The position numbers and the translations under genes are program-made. A stretch of DNA of 63,450 bases, filler included, from Octopus bimaculoides (Eukaryota), in assembly GCF_001194135.2 (NCBI RefSeq). It is 7 parts of 6 records of this genome, joined end to end, with 100 filler letters (N's around TTAATTAATTAA, not from the genome) between each part and the next. Parts side by side here need not be neighbours in the genome. Positions count along the whole stretch, not along the records: positions 41,647 to 49,484 come from NC_068990.1; 6 more parts are not named here. One strand, given 5' to 3'. Under the pieces are notes generated by a model, which worked only from the letters and a program-made list of their open reading frames with translations, had not been told where the DNA came from and made no database searches. Of the stretch, positions 41,896-48,756 are shown piece by piece (the first letter of the stretch is position 1; the number at the start of each line of letters is the position of its first letter).

Positions 41896-43514
41896 TTCTC
41901 ATGAAGCACTTATTTCTCTTACTTTGATCCGCAATAAATGATTTTCGACATGTCCATCATATCCATTTAATGATTACCGTTTTTATATACATACACTCAC
42001 GAGTATGTATATTCATATAATCCGCCTTACACACATGCATACACATATACATATATATGTATACACACACAAATACATATGTATAAGATACGTGATGGAA
42101 GTCGAGACAGCAACGTGGGTGACTCTTACTTGTTAATGTGCTGTCAAGGGAAGACAACTGCTTAGTAATCATTTCTCAGCTTTTACTACGACGGAATATC
42201 ACTAAAAAAAATAACAGCTTGAAACGAATGTCTGTTTATTCCTCAAAGAATATATCGGAAAACTGCTCGTGAAGTTGTTTGTTGCTACAATTAAAATTAT
42301 TGGCTACTATAAGATATTTTAACATGGTAGAATTCCCTGGAAACTGTTATTATTCTGTATGTAAACATTAAGAGCTTTCTCTTTATTCTCCGGATTCCTA
42401 ATCTCAATAGAGATAGAAAAGAAAAAAAAACATTCCATTAATTTCCTCCGATTTTTTTCTGTTTGGCTGCACCTGTGGAAATTTTAAAGTTTATTGAACA
42501 TTTTAAAATTTGGCGTATTGGTGTAATTTTCCACGCTGAATCTTAGGAGCTAATTCACTTTCCAGAGAGATTAAAGTTTGATAATTGTACCCTGTCAGAA
42601 AACAAGATTTGGAAGCTGTCATTTTGTGCGTGACTGAAAGTGTTGTCAACCGTAAATGAATTAAATATTAGCGGAATTCTGTTTTGCTCAAGCCATAAAA
42701 CCCTTCATAACTTTATTTTTTGGAATTTTCAGAAAATCTTTGCAAATTTGTAATCTACACTCGGGAATTCATACGATTATGAAAAAAAAAATTAGTGCGT
42801 GATTTAAGGCCTATTTCGCTATTATTTTTAACACATCCCACGACTCCCTTATACCTCACGTGTTTTAAATATTTAATAAGCGAAAAATGACCACGAGGAT
42901 AAGCAGCTTGGCTTGTTATTATGGAAACAGGCACCTATACGTCTGTAGCTTTCGATTGGCTAAAGCTACCCAAAATTTGCAAACTTTAAAAGCTATTAAC
43001 TCTTTATTTATTGATTTTTGGCGAAAATGAATTTCTTGCAAATGATCATCATACAAAAGTACATCAAGACATCCAATACGAAATCAATTGGAACAAAAGT
43101 TGAAGAAATTGGAAAGTGGCAACCAAACAGAAAAGATCCCACCACCATTCTAAATTGTAAATCTGTGGTTGCGATCCACTGAAACTAGTTTTTACACCGA
43201 GTATACACAAAATATAAATTATGGTCATTACGTATTTTTCCATTATTGGAATATGGAAAAGGAAAAAGAAAAATATATAATGACCATTATTTATACTTTG
43301 TCATTGATTTCGCTTAGACATATCGAGACTAATAACCAAAATATCTCCAATATGTTCCCCTTTTAATTCTACCCAAAGCGCACGCGTATATTTGCATACT
43401 TTTTTCTACCTTGTGATAGAATTTTCCATAGCTATCAACATAAACTTTCTCACTCATAACGCTTATAAGTTATGAAAATATAATTTTCCCAAATAAAGTG
43501 CACTTCATATTCAA

Positions 43515-43583: not shown

Positions 43584-43677
43584 AATGAAGTTCAATACAT
43601 AACATTTGGTTTTCCGGTGTCATCTCTTTGTTCTCTGTTACCTTTTATATATATATATATATACACGCATACATATA

Positions 43678-44610
43678 CGAGGAGGTCCCCATAAATAACC
43701 AGAAACGTTCTTTGTGGAACAAGCTCGTTGTAATTCAGGCTTCTGCCGCCCGTTAGAAGCCACTTCATGCGACCTTCAGGCATCAGTATACCGGCTGGCG
43801 TCGTCGAGTGAAGTCATACTACCTCGAGATACGTCTTAGCTTTGCAATGCTTCTTCGCTGTTCGTCGATTTTTGCGATGTCTGAAACGAAGGAACATCGT
43901 GCTTTCGTGATTTTCTGTTTTCTGGTGGGAAAAACGGCAGCCGGAACAGCTGTCACGCTTCAAACAGCTTACAAGGACGCTGCCATGAGCAAAACCCAAG
44001 TTTACGTGTGATTTTCACGCTTTAGGAATGATTATTCCTTGCTTTGAAAACCAACCTCGTTCAGAGTGAATTTTCATGATTTCATTCGTTCGGGTGGTGG
44101 AGACCTTCCGAACGAATGAAAACATCACGAAAATTCATAAACTGATCTTCAAGGACCAAACAATTGACGAACTTGTTGATATGACTAGTGTGTCCTGGAA
44201 CTCCTGCCAACAAATTTTGAGCTAGGAATTGTAAATTAAAAGAGTTGCAGCAAAATTTGTGCCTCGCTAGCTTACGGAAGATCAAAAGCTAGCTCACAGA
44301 AGATCTGAATGCGTGTCGTGAACTGAAAGAACAGGAAGTTGATCCGGACCTTTTTTCGAAGGTCATCACTGGTGATGAAGGCTGGTGCTACGGAATTTGC
44401 AGATGTGGAAGAGGTGAATTAAAAAACGAAGGAGGCGTTAAAAGGAATCACTTCGCAAGAGTTCCAGCACTGCTTCTAACAATGGAAGACATATCTGAAC
44501 CGATGCATTGCTTCAAATGGAGAATACTTTGAAGACGATAAAAGTGTAAACCTGTAAAACTAAGAGAATAAAATATTTCAAAATTCCGGTTTCTTTTGGG
44601 TACCTCCTCA
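43678..44610 (+). mobile_element. Internally deleted mariner element with both TIRs
   Basis: Imperfect TIRs cgaggaggtccccat / tgggtacctcctca flanked by TA. Peptides run from MSETKEHRAFVIFCFLVGKT to VITGDEGWCYG, then jump to C-terminal CIASNGEYFE. Confidence 0.88.
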
Positions 44611-44656: not shown

Positions 44657-44818
44657 TAGTCGCAGGAGTGACTGTGTGGTAAGTAGCTTGCTTACCAACC
44701 ACATGGTTTCGGGTTCATTCCCACTGCGTGGCACCTTGGGCAAGTGTCTTCTACTATAGCCTCGGGCCAACCAAAGCCTTGAGTGGTTTTGGTAGACGGA
44801 AACCAAAAGAAGCCCGTC

Positions 44819-44881
<63 letters not shown>

Positions 44882-45102
44882 TGTGTGTGTTTGTGTGTCT
44901 GTGTTTGTCCTCCCTACATCGCTTGACAACCGATGCTGGTGTGTTTACGTCCCTGTAACATTAGCGGTTCGGCAAAAGGAGACCGATAGAATAAGTACTA
45001 GGCTTACAAAGAATAAGTCCTGGGGTCGATTTGCTCGACTAAAGGCGGTGCTCCAGCATGGCCGCAGTCAAATGACTGAAACAAGTAAAAGAGTAAAAGA
45101 GT
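44657..45102 (+). mobile_element. SINE family A, full-length reference copy
   Basis: A-box-like gactgtgtggtaa, B-box-like gggttcattccc, CORE-like gcaccttgggcaagtgtc, internal (TG)n and a (TAAAAGAG)n tail. Confidence 0.93.
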
Positions 45103-45648: not shown

Positions 45649-46740
45649 AAATAAATAAGGGTTCCGAACTACCAGCTTGCTAGAAATAGGAGTCAACATC
45701 CAAACGCCACAAATCTCTCACTATAAATAAACACGCACGGTTGATGCAACGAATATAAGATAAATATGCCTTACTCTTTACTCTTAATTTGTTTCAGTCA
45801 TTTGACTGTGGCCATGCTGGAGCACCACCTTTTAGTCGAGCAAATCGACCCCAGGACTTATTCTTTGTATGCATTAGACTCGGAAAGTTTGTGAGGAACA
45901 CAATGGCCCAATTTACTGGCTTTTCCGATAGCATACAGGTGTCGATGAATGGTTGAATGACCAAATCCAAGTTTCTCTACGAATTCCTCAATAGTTACGA
46001 TGGAATTTTGTTCCACCAGGGTGTGCAGATCTTCCAGGACGAGTCTCGTCTTCTAGAATGTAATTTCCGGCTCGGAATTTCTGGAACCACTGTTGACACT
46101 GGCTGACGCTTATTGTCCGATCCCCCATATACTGCATTAATATTCTTCGTACCTTCGCAGAGGGACTGAGCCAGGAACCATGTGTTTGGGAAGTAAACTT
46201 TTTACCACACAGCCACTCCTGGGTGATTTCTGATATAAAATGTTAACGAATATAGAGAGGGAGTATATAATTAAAGGTAAACCTTAGTATGTGACTGGTA
46301 CCTTATATCAAAACCTAGATGAGTGATAGTCGAAGTCCACTCTGATTTGATTTGAAATTAAAAAATAAAGAAACATAACTCAATACCTGCAGCAGATATT
46401 TTGTCAAAATTTTTAACAATTCTATCAAATGAAAGTACATGAAAATATAAGGCGGTATATTTCCAGTTGCAAATACGAGTTTGCATTTTATCAAAGGGAG
46501 TACATCTGTACTCTAGTGTTAATAACGACCATCAAAAACTGAATACTTCTCTGTGCATGTATGTATGTATGTATTTGTGTATGTATACACATGCATCTTT
46601 TGTCTTTTGTTTCCATCATTGGACTGCATTGAAGGGTTTTAGTTGAACAAATCGATCCCTGTACATACATTATTTATTTATTTTTTAAAGCCTGGTACGT
46701 ATTCTATTGGTCATTGTTGTTGAGCTGCTAATGTCACGAT
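45270..46740 (-). mobile_element. Cluster of SINE A/B fragments around a probable LINE fragment
   Basis: Family B remnant at about 45270-45420. Family A pieces at about 45420-45645, 45775-45870, 46155-46220 and 46590-46740. Confidence 0.6.
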
Positions 46741-46956
46741 GCTAACTGGAGAGTGAAAAGCACAGATACACTGACTATAACCTCAGGCCAACAAATAAGT
46801 TGAACTGAACTGACAGAAACTGTCTAAGGGTTGTATTTACCCTGATATATTTTATGAGCAATTTAAACTTTATTTGTATTTGATCATCTTCAAAAGAGAA
46901 ATATCTCATTTTCAAATTTTTCCCTGCTTCAAACAAAATCCACTGCGTATGTGTGC

Positions 46957-47044
<88 letters not shown>

Positions 47045-47205
47045 TAGAGAGAGAGAAAGAGAGAGAGAGACAGAGATAGACAGACAGAGAGGTCTTAATT
47101 CTTCTTCATCACATTTAATGCAAAATCTTTTAGTCTTTAACATTTCAAAGACAATTCCACAAAATTTACATTAGACGGATATTTGTCCTCATCTTGTTTG
47201 TTGTT

Positions 47206-47251
47206 AACACAACGTTTCGGCTGATATACCCTTCAGCCTCCATCAGGTGTC
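47206..47251 (-). ncRNA. Minimal HHR motif in the inverted copy (A9G variant)
   Basis: GACAC-CUGAUGG-A-GGCUG-aaggguauau-CAGCC-GAA-ACGU-U-GUGUU. Confidence 0.75.
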
Positions 47252-47415
47252 TTGGGGAAATTTCGAACCTGGGGTTCTCTCATTCCTAAGGTATTCTTCG
47301 ATGTTATTATTATTCAGGTCACTGCCTAGATTTGAACTCGGAATGGGCATATGGCATAGTGGTTAAGAGTGCGGGCTACTAACCTCAAAATTCCGAGTTC
47401 AATTCCAGGCAGTGA

Positions 47416-47454
<39 letters not shown>

Positions 47455-47510
47455 CAACAACATCGAAAAATACTTTAGGAATGAGAACCCCAGGTTCGAA
47501 ATTTCCCCAA

Positions 47511-47556
47511 GGCACCTGATGAAGGCTGGAGGGTATATCAGCCGAAACATTGTGTT
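47511..47556 (+). ncRNA. Minimal type-I HHR motif
   Basis: GGCAC-CUGAUGA-A-GGCUG-gaggguauau-CAGCC-GAA-ACAU-U-GUGUU. The core is canonical; stem III is ACAU here versus ACGU in the sister copy. Confidence 0.8.
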
Positions 47557-47900
47557 AACAACAAACAAGATGAGGACAAATATCTGTCAAATGTAACATA
47601 ATTCCTCACCTCTTAAATCTAGAACTGAATTCCACAAAAGATCTAGTTCTTAAATTGTATTTTCCTTAGGGTAATACTCTGCAGCAATTCTGATAATGTT
47701 GACTTCATTAAGAACATTTTTTTTTAATTTATAAGTAAATTCCTACCAATGCACTTCCTCATGCATCGAGACAGTTATATTTTGACACATCTCAAATGAA
47801 TTGTTAGAATAAACAAACTGGTGTGTTGTTCTACGCAGAAACTATACAAGCAAACTTAGAGATATCATAATCTCTTTTGGTGGTCATTAAAAATATTGCA

Positions 47901-48293
47901 GTGGAGGCGCAATGGCCCAGTGGTTAGGGCAGCGGACTCGCGGTTTCGATTCCCAGACCGGGCGTTGTGAGTGTTTATTGAGCGAAAACACTTAAAGCTC
48001 CACGAGGCTCCGGCAGGGGATGGTGGCGAACCCTGCTGTACTCTTTCACCACAACTTTCTCTCACTCTTACTTCCTGTTTCTGTTGTGCTTGTAATTCAA
48101 AGGGTCAGCCTTGTCACACACTGTGTCACGCTGAATATCCCCGAGAACTACGTTAAGGGTACACGTGTCTGTGGAGTGCTCAGCCACTTGCACGTTAATT
48201 TCACGAGCAAGCTGTTCCGTTGATCGGATCAACTGGAACCCTCGACGTCGTAAGCGACGGAGTGCCAACAACAACAACAACAACAACAACAAC
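47901..48293 (+). mobile_element. SINE family C, full length and probably young
   Basis: Perfect 12-bp TSD AAAAATATTGCA at 47889-47900 and 48294-48305, with a (CAA)n tail. Confidence 0.95.
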
Positions 48294-48756
48294 AAAAATA
48301 TTGCAATATTGGAAACCTTTCCATAGCATCAGCAGGTTATCTCAGGGTCACAAGCATTTTGCCTCTTAGTCTGTATACTTCGTCTGAATTGAGCAGCAAG
48401 GACTGAATTTGTTTTCACTCACAGAAGGGTTCCATATATGGTCTTTTGTCAATTACAACCACTTTGAACTGGTCTCAGCAGCCTTAGCTCCCTTCAGTTG
48501 TTTAGGTTTCAAACCAATCTTCTGCACGAAACAGTACACTGGTCTTTCTGGAAAACCATGCAGCCAACTTCAACAGGGAATGAGAAAAACGCCATTCTTT
48601 GAGAAGCACTTTTTAACCAACTCTTGATATTTGGTTTTCTTCAGTTAGTAAGAAAAGTTAAGTCTGTCCTCTCGGAGCACCGAGTTCACCCACAATGATT
48701 ATTTTGCAATTTTCTGGCACATCTCATATGAACACAATCACTATTATAATTTTTAA

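What the first reader, a model, noticed from the sequence alone, without database searches (positions are those of the whole stretch)
47165..47627. tRNA-headed SINE fused to a hammerhead ribozyme, inserted with Penelope-type architecture
Seen: a Pol III-type head (A box 47352-47362, B box 47397-47405), an (AAT)n spacer, then a minimal HHR at 47511-47556 lying 76 nt from the 3' end. There is no TTTT in 47345-47627; the first is at 47660. An inverted 5'-truncated copy (47165-47344) abuts the head. One perfect 12-bp TSD (AATTCCACAAAA) flanks the whole composite, so both arms came from one insertion event. The two HHR copies have different lesions (A9G versus ACGU to ACAU), so their consensus is intact. 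Established: PLE pseudo-LTRs carry minimal HHRs with palindromic stem III, and PLE insertions often have inverted partial repeats. Ordinary SINEs borrow LINE tails, and tRNA-plus-HHR repeats are known from Schistosoma Sm-alpha. Inference: this is a SINE-like parasite of Penelope RT/GIY-YIG machinery, which I do not recall being described in cephalopods.
Basis: partly seen in the sequence, partly recalled or inferred. Interest (0 to 1): 0.9.

Follow-up and report, generated by a model that had tools for sequence, protein, structure and literature searches.

The report
Pol III-headed retroposon with Penelope-type hammerhead
A 283-base non-coding mobile element with a tRNA-gene-type promoter and a decayed minimal hammerhead ribozyme sits next to an inverted partial copy of itself inside one target-site duplication, the layout left by Penelope-like retrotransposons, so it may be a SINE that borrows Penelope rather than LINE machinery, but only this one locus could be examined.

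Summary
A perfect 12-bp duplication (AATTCCACAAAA, 47153-64 and 47628-39) brackets a head-to-head composite. The right unit (47345-47627, +) is full length. It starts 7 nt before an 11/11 A box and has a 9/11 B box, an (AAT)10(AAC)4 spacer, and no TTTT or A-tail.

The left arm (47165-47344, -) copies unit positions 46-252. It is 94% identical to the right arm and lacks both the first 45 nt and the last 31 nt.

Each arm carries a type I minimal hammerhead with one different lesion: A9G in the left arm, G16.2A in the right. The inferred ancestor fits a strict descriptor that hits 0.001 times per shuffled piece.

These are an unpaired base between positions 9 and 10.1, a G10.1-C11.1 pair, and a 30-40-bp tail at one end only.

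Against this, Rfam and ARAGORN recognise neither a hammerhead nor a tRNA. No other copy and no partner Penelope element could be reached, because no searchable collection appears to hold this genome. Both ribozyme copies are now defective.

Verdict: probably (about 0.6) a Pol III-headed non-autonomous element mobilised by Penelope-like RT/endonuclease. That would be a new variant of known kinds (Sm-alpha, retrozymes). It is not yet shown to be a family.

The parts
47153..47164 (.). Left copy of the 12-bp target-site duplication AATTCCACAAAA
   Evidence: Direct repeat D6, 100% identical. It abuts the first base of the inverted arm. The chance of such a repeat at these boundaries is about 3e-5.
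47165..47344 (-). Inverted partial copy of the unit. It corresponds to unit positions 46-252, so it lacks the A-box half of the head and the last 31 nt.
   Evidence: Inverted repeats I1-I3. Alignment to the right arm gives 94.4% identity, 8 transitions and 2 transversions. It keeps the B-box half of the head, so its template was the short element itself, not a long Penelope element.
47206..47251 (-). Minimal hammerhead, left-arm copy: GACAC CUGAUGG A GGCUGA-loop-UCAGCC GAAA CG U U|GUGUU. It carries the A9G lesion, and the ACGU palindrome is intact.
   Evidence: Found by the relaxed descriptor with one violation: helix I 5 bp, helix II 6 bp, no loop III.
47345..47627 (+). Full-length 283-nt non-coding unit: head, microsatellite spacer, ribozyme-bearing 3' region and tail
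   Evidence: It starts exactly 7 nt before the A box, which equals tRNA position +1. It has no TTTT inside, and it has no A-rich or simple-repeat 3' end.
47352..47362 (+). Pol III A box TGGCATAGTGG
   Evidence: Matches TRGCNNAGTGG at 11/11. The sequence is shared with the heads of two neighbouring SINEs.
47396..47406 (+). Pol III B box AGTTCAATTCC
   Evidence: Matches GGTTCGANNCC at 9/11 and lies 33 nt after the A box. GAGTTCAATTCC is identical in the SINE copy at 49115-48830.
47420..47461 (+). Internal microsatellite (AAT)10(AAC)4. The left arm has only (AAT)3-AAC.
47511..47556 (+). Minimal hammerhead, right-arm copy: GGCAC CUGAUGA A GGCUGG-loop-UCAGCC GAAA CA U U|GUGUU. The core is intact, and G16.2 to A (a CpG-type transition) breaks helix III. 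The predicted cleavage site is between 47551 and 47552.
   Evidence: Relaxed descriptor hit. The strict descriptor hits 0.001 times per shuffled piece. Helices I and II appear in the minimum-energy fold of the 46-mer, and helix II also in longer contexts.
47597..47627 (+). 31-nt extension present only on the right arm (a 'tail')
   Evidence: It is absent from the left arm, which ends at the TSD. It has no similarity to the flanks or to the rest of the element. It matches the 30-40-bp one-sided tail described for Penelope-like insertions (PMC8557442).
47628..47639 (.). Right copy of the 12-bp target-site duplication

Best explanation
This is one retrotransposition event of a short non-coding element.

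The element's structure, as read from the sequence:
- The 5' end is a tRNA-gene-type internal Pol III promoter (A and B boxes).
- The 3' half carries a Penelope-type minimal type I hammerhead ribozyme.

Inferred mechanism:
1. A master copy is transcribed by Pol III from position +1. Because the element has no T4 terminator, the transcript runs into the flank.
2. The RT/GIY-YIG endonuclease of a Penelope-like element recognises the 3' region, which derives from or mimics a pseudo-LTR including the hammerhead.
3. The endonuclease makes a staggered cut 12 bp apart and reverse-transcribes the RNA from the bottom-strand nick to the RNA's 5' end. This produces the right arm, including the 31-nt tail.
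4. A second cDNA forms the left arm. It is primed either from the top-strand nick on a second RNA or by snap-back on the first cDNA. It starts 31 nt inside the 3' end and stops 45 nt short of the 5' end.
5. The product is the inverted 5'-truncated partner typical of Penelope insertions.

Shown: the anatomy, the single target-site duplication, the ribozyme motif, and its hallmark details.

Inferred: Pol III transcription, the Penelope partner, and any ribozyme activity.

The template of this particular copy was not hammerhead-cleaved. It runs from +1 to 76 nt past the cleavage site. So the motif more likely serves as part of the RT recognition or dimerisation module, or processes tandem masters, than as a 3'-end maker. 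Since insertion the two arms have drifted about 6% apart and each ribozyme has acquired one disabling change, so this copy is a fossil.
For: Single event:
- A perfect 12-bp TSD brackets both arms. It is the only such repeat in 1.6 kb, with a chance of about 3e-5.
- Neither arm has a TSD of its own.

It is the short element, not a truncated long element:
- The left arm retains the B-box half of the head and the microsatellite.
- The right arm begins exactly at tRNA position +1.
- The head aligns with the heads of two other SINEs in the piece.

Ribozyme:
- A relaxed descriptor finds exactly the two arms in 7.8 kb. Shuffles give 0.063 loci per piece, and none of 300 reaches helix II of 5 bp or more, helix I of 4 bp or more, and no loop III.
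- The inferred ancestor, with each lesion absent from the other arm, satisfies the strict descriptor, which hits 0.001 times per shuffle.
- An unpaired A between positions 9 and 10.1, G10.1-C11.1, the palindromic ACGU, a 6-bp helix II and a 5-bp helix I are the features Cervera and de la Pena list for Penelope minimal hammerheads (PMC4209133).

Insertion architecture (PMC8557442; PMC8969392):
- An inverted 5'-truncated copy abuts the 5' end.
- A 30-40-bp tail is present at one end only.
- TSD length is variable in this group.

Further points:
- Dual minimal hammerheads 100-700 bp apart on opposite strands are reported in genomes that carry Penelope elements.
- The 3' end has no poly(A) or simple-repeat tail.
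- As internal contrast, one neighbouring tRNA-headed SINE (47905-48297) is a plain one-orientation insertion with a (CAA)n tail and its own 12-bp TSD. The one at 49115-48830 is also a plain one-orientation insertion with its own ~13-bp TSD.
- Penelope elements are annotated in cephalopod genomes (PMC6962438; PMC8557442).
Against: - No hammerhead family of Rfam 15 scores either arm at E<=10, even when only 73 nt are searched.
- No tRNA model or ARAGORN hit was found, and the head does not fold as a cloverleaf.
- Only one locus is known. Copy number, a consensus and covariation are all unavailable.
- No Penelope RT/endonuclease remnant lies in the 7.8-kb piece, and no pseudo-LTR could be compared.
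- There is no direct tandem partial copy, which is the most typical Penelope feature.
- The hammerhead was spotted by eye in a large scan, so the chance estimate is post hoc.
- The double-hammerhead dimer is feasible (-21 to -25 kcal/mol) but is not the predicted minimum.
- Substitution density in the ribozyme (4 in 46 nt) is not lower than elsewhere in the arms.
- Snap-back or twin-priming inversions can also occur with LINE reverse transcriptases.
Confidence: 0.6

Rival explanations
1. This is an ordinary LINE-mobilised tRNA-type SINE. The inverted partner came from a rare RT snap-back or twin-priming accident during LINE target-primed reverse transcription. The hammerhead-like motif is either a passenger fragment captured from a Penelope pseudo-LTR or retrozyme, or a chance match with no role in mobilisation.
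For: - The head is closely related to the heads of LINE-type SINEs in the same piece.
- The 12-bp TSD has the same length as that of the neighbouring (CAA)n-tailed SINE.
- Rfam does not recognise a hammerhead.
- No Penelope element lies nearby.
Against: - The 3' end has no A-rich or simple-repeat tail.
- Twin priming gives an inverted 5' segment, not a 207-nt duplicate of the same 3' region.
- The one-sided 31-nt extension is reported as not seen in LINE reverse transcription (PMC8557442).
- The ancestral motif meets a strict descriptor at 0.001 hits per shuffle and also carries three Penelope-specific details not required by the descriptor.
Confidence: 0.2
2. This is a retrozyme-type element with a Pol III head. 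Master copies would be head-to-tail tandems whose hammerheads act as dimers to release ~283-nt RNAs. A tRNA ligase circularises these RNAs, and the circles are the retrotransposition templates. The locus seen here would be an atypical dispersed by-product.
For: - The unit length of 283 nt falls within the 170-400 nt reported for metazoan retrozyme circles (PMC7229834).
- The palindromic ACGU helix III implies that activity requires a dimer (PMC4209133).
- Vertebrate non-LTR retrozymes are now argued to be non-autonomous Penelope derivatives (10.64898/2026.07.22.740005).
- Sm-alpha combines a Pol III promoter with a hammerhead in tandem arrays (PMC6765202).
Against: - There is no tandem copy here.
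- This insertion starts at the Pol III +1 position and ends 76 nt beyond the cleavage site, so its template was neither cleaved nor circularly permuted.
- The motif is the minimal type, without the loop-loop contacts of retrozyme hammerheads.
Confidence: 0.1
3. This is not a single retrotransposition. Either it is a foldback or MITE-type DNA transposon with long terminal inverted repeats, or it results from two separate events (an insertion followed by a local inverted duplication), or it is an assembly foldback artefact.
For: The region forms a long hairpin. Rfam's MIR7533 hairpin model scores it at 57.6 bits, far below that model's gathering score of 230.
Against: - The termini are not inverted repeats of each other. 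The left end is TTTACATT... and the right end is ...CTAGAACTG, and the right arm carries 31 extra nt.
- A 12-bp TSD is unusual for DNA transposons (my own knowledge).
- The centre holds a Pol III head in one orientation.
- The arms differ by 6% and in microsatellite length, so this is not a read or assembly foldback.
- A later DNA-level duplication would have had to land exactly between the TSD and the element's first base.
Confidence: 0.05

Closest known systems
Minimal type I hammerheads of Penelope-like element pseudo-LTRs (Cervera and de la Pena 2014, PMC4209133; Lunse et al. 2017)
   Same: - The order is CUGAUGA, helix II, GAAA.
- Helix III is reduced to a loop-less palindrome (ACGU).
- There is an unpaired base between positions 9 and 10.1, and a G10.1-C11.1 pair.
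- Helix II is long (6 bp) and helix I is short (5 bp).
- The motif occurs as two copies on opposite strands a few hundred bp apart.
   Different: - Here the motif sits in a 283-nt unit headed by Pol III A and B boxes, not in the terminal repeat of an RT/endonuclease-coding element.
- Both copies are mutated.
- No sequence comparison with any real pseudo-LTR was possible.
Penelope-like element insertion architecture (Evgen'ev and Arkhipova 2005; Craig et al. 2021, PMC8557442)
   Same: - An inverted 5'-truncated copy abuts the 5' end.
- A 30-40-bp tail is present at one end only.
- A TSD of variable length is present.
- A long microsatellite lies nearby, (GA)n about 80 bp upstream.
   Different: - There is no ORF.
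- There is no direct tandem partial copy (pseudo-LTR).
- The insertion is near, not inside, the microsatellite.
Sm-alpha / Sj-alpha SINE-like elements of Schistosoma (Ferbeyre et al. 1998; Laha et al. 2000; summarised in PMC6765202)
   Same: These are short non-coding units that combine a Pol III promoter with a hammerhead ribozyme.
   Different: - Sm-alpha carries a canonical, efficient type I hammerhead with loops and typically sits in tandem arrays.
- The present unit has the Penelope minimal type and is dispersed with an inverted partner.
- The hosts are flatworms, not the presumed cephalopod.
- Sequence homology was not tested.
Metazoan non-LTR retrozymes, proposed to be non-autonomous Penelope derivatives (PMC7229834; PMC7761336; bioRxiv 10.64898/2026.07.22.740005), and non-autonomous Chlamys elements such as MRC1 (PMC8557442)
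   Same: - These are small non-coding hammerhead-bearing, or Penelope-3'-end-bearing, elements that depend on another element's RT.
- Their unit size range is similar.
   Different: - Retrozymes are tandem repeats without a described Pol III or tRNA-like head, and most invertebrate ones have full hammerheads.
- MRC1-type elements lack both a tRNA-like head and a hammerhead.
tRNA-derived SINEs of molluscs and cephalopods (Ohshima and Okada 1994; Ceph-SINEs; the neighbouring copies at 47905-48297 and 49115-48830)
   Same: - The A/B-box head is similar to theirs.
- They share small size, TSDs and an internal microsatellite.
   Different: - Their bodies and tails are unrelated to this unit.
- This unit has no simple-repeat tail, unlike the (CAA)n-tailed copy at 47905-48297, and it carries the ribozyme and the inverted partner.

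Membership tests
tRNA-derived SINE | Internal Pol III promoter: A box and B box with 30-60 nt spacing near the 5' end | tested here: met
   The A box matches at 11/11 (47352-47362). The B box matches at 9/11 (47396-47406). The spacing is 33 nt, and the unit starts 7 nt before the A box.
tRNA-derived SINE | Recognisable homology to a tRNA (cloverleaf or tRNA model match) | tested here: not met
   ARAGORN finds no gene. Rfam gives no tRNA hit at E<=10. The head's fold is no better than shuffles, z = +1.9. Its only similarity is to the heads of neighbouring SINEs.
tRNA-derived SINE | Interspersed, multi-copy family | not testable with these tools
   All pattern scans and ORF-word searches returned nothing. 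Controls with the abundant neighbouring SINE also returned nothing, or only three short Logan contigs. The collections therefore appear to lack this genome.
tRNA-derived SINE | 3' end shared with a partner LINE, or an A-rich or simple-repeat tail | tested here: not met
   The unit ends ...TCTAGAACTG with no repeat or A-run. A partner LINE could not be searched.
tRNA-derived SINE | Short, non-coding, flanked by a TSD | tested here: met
   The unit is 283 nt. The only open frames across it are a poly-N-containing 75-aa ORF on the + strand and a poly-L-containing 80-aa ORF on the - strand, and neither frame has any database relative. The TSD is a perfect 12 bp.
Hammerhead ribozyme, Penelope minimal type I | Catalytic core C3-U4-G5-A6-N7-G8-A9 ... 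G12-A13-A14 ... A15.1-U16.1, H17 | tested here: inconclusive
   Each arm has one violation: A9G in the left arm, and loss of the 15.2-16.2 pair in the right arm. Each lesion is absent from the other arm, so the inferred ancestor meets the strict descriptor, which hits 0.001 times per shuffled piece.
Hammerhead ribozyme, Penelope minimal type I | Helices I and II in type I topology | tested here: met
   Helix I has 5 bp and helix II has 6 bp in both arms. The two arm differences that fall in helices keep pairing, G-U versus A-U. Both helices appear in the minimum-energy fold of the 46-mer.
Hammerhead ribozyme, Penelope minimal type I | [quoted passage not shown] | tested here: met
   The sequence reads CUGAUGA-A-G...C-GAAA-CG-U, with ACGU intact in the left arm. 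These criteria come from PMC4209133.
Hammerhead ribozyme, Penelope minimal type I | Match to a curated hammerhead covariance model (Rfam) | tested here: not met
   No hammerhead family scores at E<=10 in the 7.8-kb, 491-nt or 73-nt searches. The Rfam models expect a helix III with a loop, which minimal variants lack.
Hammerhead ribozyme, Penelope minimal type I | Self-cleavage, as a dimer | not testable with these tools
   Only thermodynamics could be examined. It is not the predicted minimum.
Penelope-like element (autonomous) | ORF with telomerase-like RT plus GIY-YIG endonuclease | tested here: not met
   No such ORF or remnant exists in the piece. The only protein remnants are mariner HTH_48 fragments. 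The feature could at most be non-autonomous.
Penelope-type insertion | Inverted 5'-truncated copy immediately adjacent to the 5' end, inside the same TSD | tested here: met
   The criterion comes from PMC8557442.
Penelope-type insertion | 30-40-bp tail extension at one end only | tested here: met
   The 31 nt at 47597-47627 occur only on the right arm and are unrelated to the flanks. The criterion comes from PMC8557442.
Penelope-type insertion | Direct partial tandem copy forming a pseudo-LTR | tested here: not met
   There is no direct repeat of the unit within the piece.
Penelope-type insertion | 3' region homologous to the pseudo-LTR of an autonomous Penelope-like element in the same genome | not testable with these tools
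   No eukaryotic genome or repeat library is searchable here.
Non-LTR retrozyme | Head-to-tail tandem repeats, each with a hammerhead, giving 170-400-nt circular RNAs | tested here: not met
   The locus holds a single direct unit plus an inverted partner. The unit length of 283 nt is in range. Circular RNA is not testable here.
Foldback / MITE DNA transposon | Terminal inverted repeats reaching both ends of the element | tested here: not met
   The right end has 31 nt with no counterpart on the left, so the termini are not complementary.

The most novel reading that the evidence does not exclude
This locus may be a fossil of a previously undescribed class: true tRNA-promoter SINEs that parasitise Penelope-like RT/GIY-YIG machinery instead of LINEs. 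In that class a Penelope minimal hammerhead would form part of the 3' module that the RT recognises, or that pairs two RNAs through its palindromic helix III. Such pairing would explain the head-to-head double insertions. It would link Sm-alpha, animal retrozymes and dispersed 'orphan' minimal hammerheads into one Penelope-dependent guild, and would give Pol III-driven hammerhead RNAs in a cephalopod.
Probability: 0.4. Interest if true: 0.7.

Novelty: new variant of a known kind. Interest (0 to 1): 0.55.

Why it matters
SINEs are defined by their dependence on LINEs. Penelope-like elements are a separate, poorly understood retroelement order, and both their insertion mechanism and the role of their hammerheads remain open questions.

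A short, Pol III-driven element that inserts with Penelope architecture would help in three ways:
- It would be a compact natural reporter for that mechanism. It would show what the RT recognises and how the inverted copies and one-sided tails arise.
- It would explain part of the thousands of 'orphan' minimal hammerheads scattered in animal genomes.
- It would add a Penelope-end category to SINE classification and repeat annotation.

If the genome-wide check fails, this is simply a decayed odd SINE insertion.

Tried and rejected
- Rfam cmscan was run at E<=10 on the whole piece, on 491 nt, and on each 73-nt ribozyme region. It gave no hammerhead and no tRNA. The only strong hit, MIR7533 at 57.6 bits against a gathering score of 230, reflects the long hairpin and I rejected it.
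- ARAGORN found nothing.
- I looked for other copies with exact-pattern scans of viral, metagenome and prokaryote-genome collections using a 22-base ribozyme pattern. All returned 0 hits. Control scans with a 26-base core of the abundant neighbouring SINE also returned 0 hits, so these negatives say nothing about copy number.
- I searched for spurious ORFs called across copies of the element in the 5.8-billion-protein collection, in two frames, and found none. The neighbouring SINE's frame gave two Logan proteins on 1.2-1.6-kb contigs (L001-L003), which do not contain the element.
- I tried to recover the source contig through window ORFs, but they are not on record.
- Literal sequence strings were searched in the paper library and gave nothing relevant. 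A run-accession look-up gave an unrelated paper.
- The 31-nt tail was tested as a copy of the flanks or of the element, and it is not.
- I considered querying with a Penelope RT written from memory to fetch cephalopod Penelope contigs. I did not do it because hits could not be filtered by host.
Full report
ANATOMY

The region is a head-to-head composite bracketed by one perfect 12-bp direct repeat, AATTCCACAAAA (47153-47164 and 47628-47639). This is the only perfect 12-mer repeat found in 46600-48200. Given local base composition, the chance of such a repeat at these boundaries is about 3e-5.

The right unit (47345-47627, + strand, 283 nt) has these features:
- It begins 7 nt before an 11/11 A box, TGGCATAGTGG at 47352-47362. 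That start corresponds to tRNA position +1.
- It has a 9/11 B box, AGTTCAATTCC at 47396-47406, 33 nt after the A box.
- It has an (AAT)10(AAC)4 spacer at 47420-47461.
- It has a unique 3' half.
- It contains no TTTT; the first is at 47660.
- Its 3' end is neither A-rich nor a simple repeat.

The left arm (47165-47344) is the reverse complement of unit positions 46-252. It aligns at 167 of 177 positions, with 8 transitions and 2 transversions and a K2P distance of 0.059. There is also a 2-nt indel and a much shorter microsatellite. The left arm lacks the first 45 nt, which is the A-box half of the head.

Because the left arm keeps the B-box half of the head, its template was the short element itself. 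It was not a fragment of a long element.

THE RIBOZYME

- The right arm reads GGCAC-CUGAUGA-A-GGCUGG(N8)UCAGCC-GAAA-CA-U-U|GUGUU.
- The left arm reads GACAC-CUGAUGG-A-GGCUGA(N8)UCAGCC-GAAA-CG-U-U|GUGUU.

This is type I hammerhead topology, with a 5-bp helix I, a 6-bp helix II and a loop-less palindromic helix III (ACGU). Each arm has one lesion that the other lacks. The left arm has A9G. The right arm has G16.2 to A, a CpG-type transition.

I wrote a descriptor for the minimal hammerhead and ran it on the piece and on shuffled versions:
- The strict version hits the real arms 0 times, because of the lesions, and hits 0.001 times per dinucleotide-shuffled 7.8-kb piece over 2000 shuffles.
- The version allowing one violation finds exactly the two arms and nothing else in the piece. 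Shuffles give 0.063 loci per piece. None of 300 shuffles reaches helix II of 5 bp or more, helix I of 4 bp or more, and no loop III.

The motif also carries details that the descriptor does not require. Cervera and de la Pena list them as emergent hallmarks of Penelope minimal hammerheads (PMC4209133):
- the G10.1-C11.1 pair;
- palindromic 15.2-16.2;
- a long helix II and a short helix I.

The two arm differences that fall in helices keep pairing, G-U versus A-U.

Evidence on the other side:
- No Rfam hammerhead model scores either arm at E<=10, even in 73-nt searches. Those models expect a helix III with a loop.
- The double-hammerhead dimer is energetically feasible (-21 to -25 kcal/mol) but is not the predicted optimum.
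- Substitutions are not rarer in the ribozyme than elsewhere in the arms. That is what one expects of dead copies.

THE HEAD

The head is tRNA-like only at the level of its promoter boxes. ARAGORN and Rfam give no tRNA hit, and the head does not fold into a cloverleaf. It does align with the heads of two other SINE copies in the same piece, including an identical GAGTTCAATTCC B-box block. So it belongs to the local pool of Pol III SINE heads, joined to a different body.

WHY PENELOPE

Craig et al. describe Penelope-like insertions as follows (PMC8557442; also PMC8969392):
- They are 5'-truncated.
- They often have a 30-40-bp tail at one end only.
- They have TSDs of variable length.
- They show a bias toward microsatellites.
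- The authors note that the tail and the inverted structures are not seen in LINE reverse transcription.

This locus shows the inverted partner, a 31-nt one-sided extension (47597-47627) unrelated to the flanks or to the element, and a 12-bp TSD. A long (GA)n tract lies about 80 bp upstream. Cervera and de la Pena also report paired minimal hammerheads 100-700 bp apart on opposite strands, and that is the arrangement here.

The neighbouring SINEs serve as internal controls:
- The copy at 47905-48297 is a plain single-orientation insertion with a (CAA)n tail and its own 12-bp TSD.
- The copy at 49115-48830 is also a plain single-orientation insertion, with a ~13-bp TSD.

MECHANISM (INFERRED)

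1. Pol III starts at +1 and reads through, because the element has no terminator.
2. A Penelope RT/GIY-YIG enzyme recognises the 3' module and makes a cut staggered by 12 bp.
3. It copies the RNA to its 5' end from the bottom-strand nick, producing the right arm.
4. A second cDNA forms the left arm. It is either primed at the top-strand nick on a second RNA or made by snap-back on the first cDNA.

The template of this copy ran from +1 to 76 nt beyond the cleavage site, so it had not been cleaved. This argues that the motif is not the 3'-end maker of the transposing RNA. It more plausibly serves as a recognition or dimerisation module, or processes tandem master copies. The role of these motifs is still called unknown in the literature (PMC7761336; PMC8557442).

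RIVALS

- A LINE-mobilised SINE with an accidental inversion and a passenger or chance motif (confidence 0.2). It is weakened by the absence of a tail repeat, by the 207-nt duplicated region, by the one-sided extension and by the motif statistics.
- A retrozyme-type element whose masters are tandem arrays (confidence 0.1). This is compatible with the main reading but is not shown by this locus.
- A foldback or MITE transposon, two separate events, or an assembly artefact (confidence 0.05). It is rejected because the termini are not inverted repeats, the arms differ by 6%, and a single TSD encloses both arms.

LIMITS

Copy number, a consensus, covariation and the partner element could not be examined. 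Pattern scans and ORF-word searches found no other copy. Controls with the very abundant neighbouring SINE also found nothing, or only three short Logan contigs at 77-81% identity. These negatives therefore reflect the collections, not the genome. The piece contains no Penelope RT remnant. I could not confirm the host organism.

COMPARISON AND NOVELTY

The literature available here describes four related things:
- Penelope minimal hammerheads;
- Sm-alpha and Sj-alpha, which combine a Pol III promoter with a canonical hammerhead in tandem arrays (PMC6765202);
- metazoan retrozymes, now argued to be non-autonomous Penelope derivatives;
- non-autonomous Chlamys elements.

None of my searches found a description of a tRNA-promoter SINE carrying a Penelope minimal hammerhead and inserting with Penelope architecture, in cephalopods or elsewhere. 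The giant-squid genome paper only counts 235 Rfam Hammerhead_1 hits and notes that Penelope and tRNA-SINE repeats are present.

I rate this a new variant of a known kind, with moderate interest. It becomes a finding only after the genome-wide check.

Noticed in passing
window 47905-48297 (+), 49115-48830 (-), 41647-~41890 (+, cut by the piece edge): Three copies of a different, evidently very abundant tRNA-headed SINE family share a conserved core (...GGAGTGCTCAGCCACTTGCACGTTAAT...). The first has a (CAA)n tail and a 12-bp TSD, AAAAATATTGCA. The second has a ~13-bp TSD, ACATTTGACACTA. Their heads resemble the head of the hammerhead-bearing unit. One frame across the core is open in all three copies. 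Logan contigs from runs SRR11869384, SRR11869390 and SRR11869391 carry relatives at 77-81% identity.
   Followed up: partly
window 46960-47075: A long (GA)n microsatellite of about 115 bp, degenerating at its 3' end, lies about 80 bp upstream of the insertion. Penelope-like elements are reported to favour microsatellite targets, but this insertion is beside the tract, not in it.
   Followed up: partly
window 43757-44529 (+) and 45861-46242 (-): These are decayed mariner/Mos1-type DNA transposon remnants. One segment hits Pfam HTH_48 (Mos1 transposase HTH) at 29.2 bits, above the cut-off. A second hits at 20.3 bits, below it.
   Followed up: partly
window 47252-47510: Rfam's MIR7533 hairpin model scores 57.6 bits (E = 7e-11 in the small search; gathering score 230). 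This reflects the long inverted repeat of the two arms, not a microRNA gene. A read-through transcript of the locus would nonetheless form a ~180-bp double-stranded hairpin.
   Followed up: partly
window 41980-42110, 43640-43680, 44800-44900, 46550-46600: TG/TA-rich and (CA)n/(TG)n simple repeats produce a string of weak microRNA-family matches (mir-297, mir-466, mir-1277 and others), all far below their gathering scores. These are low-complexity artefacts.
   Followed up: no
window 47483-47500 (and 47262-47279 on the - strand): Just upstream of the hammerhead lies CCCCAGGTTCGAAATTTCCCC, which contains a second B-box-like GGTTCGAAATT (9/11). It does not form a T-arm stem. Its meaning is unknown: it could be a chance match, a remnant of a second tRNA-like module, or an internal promoter element.
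   Followed up: no
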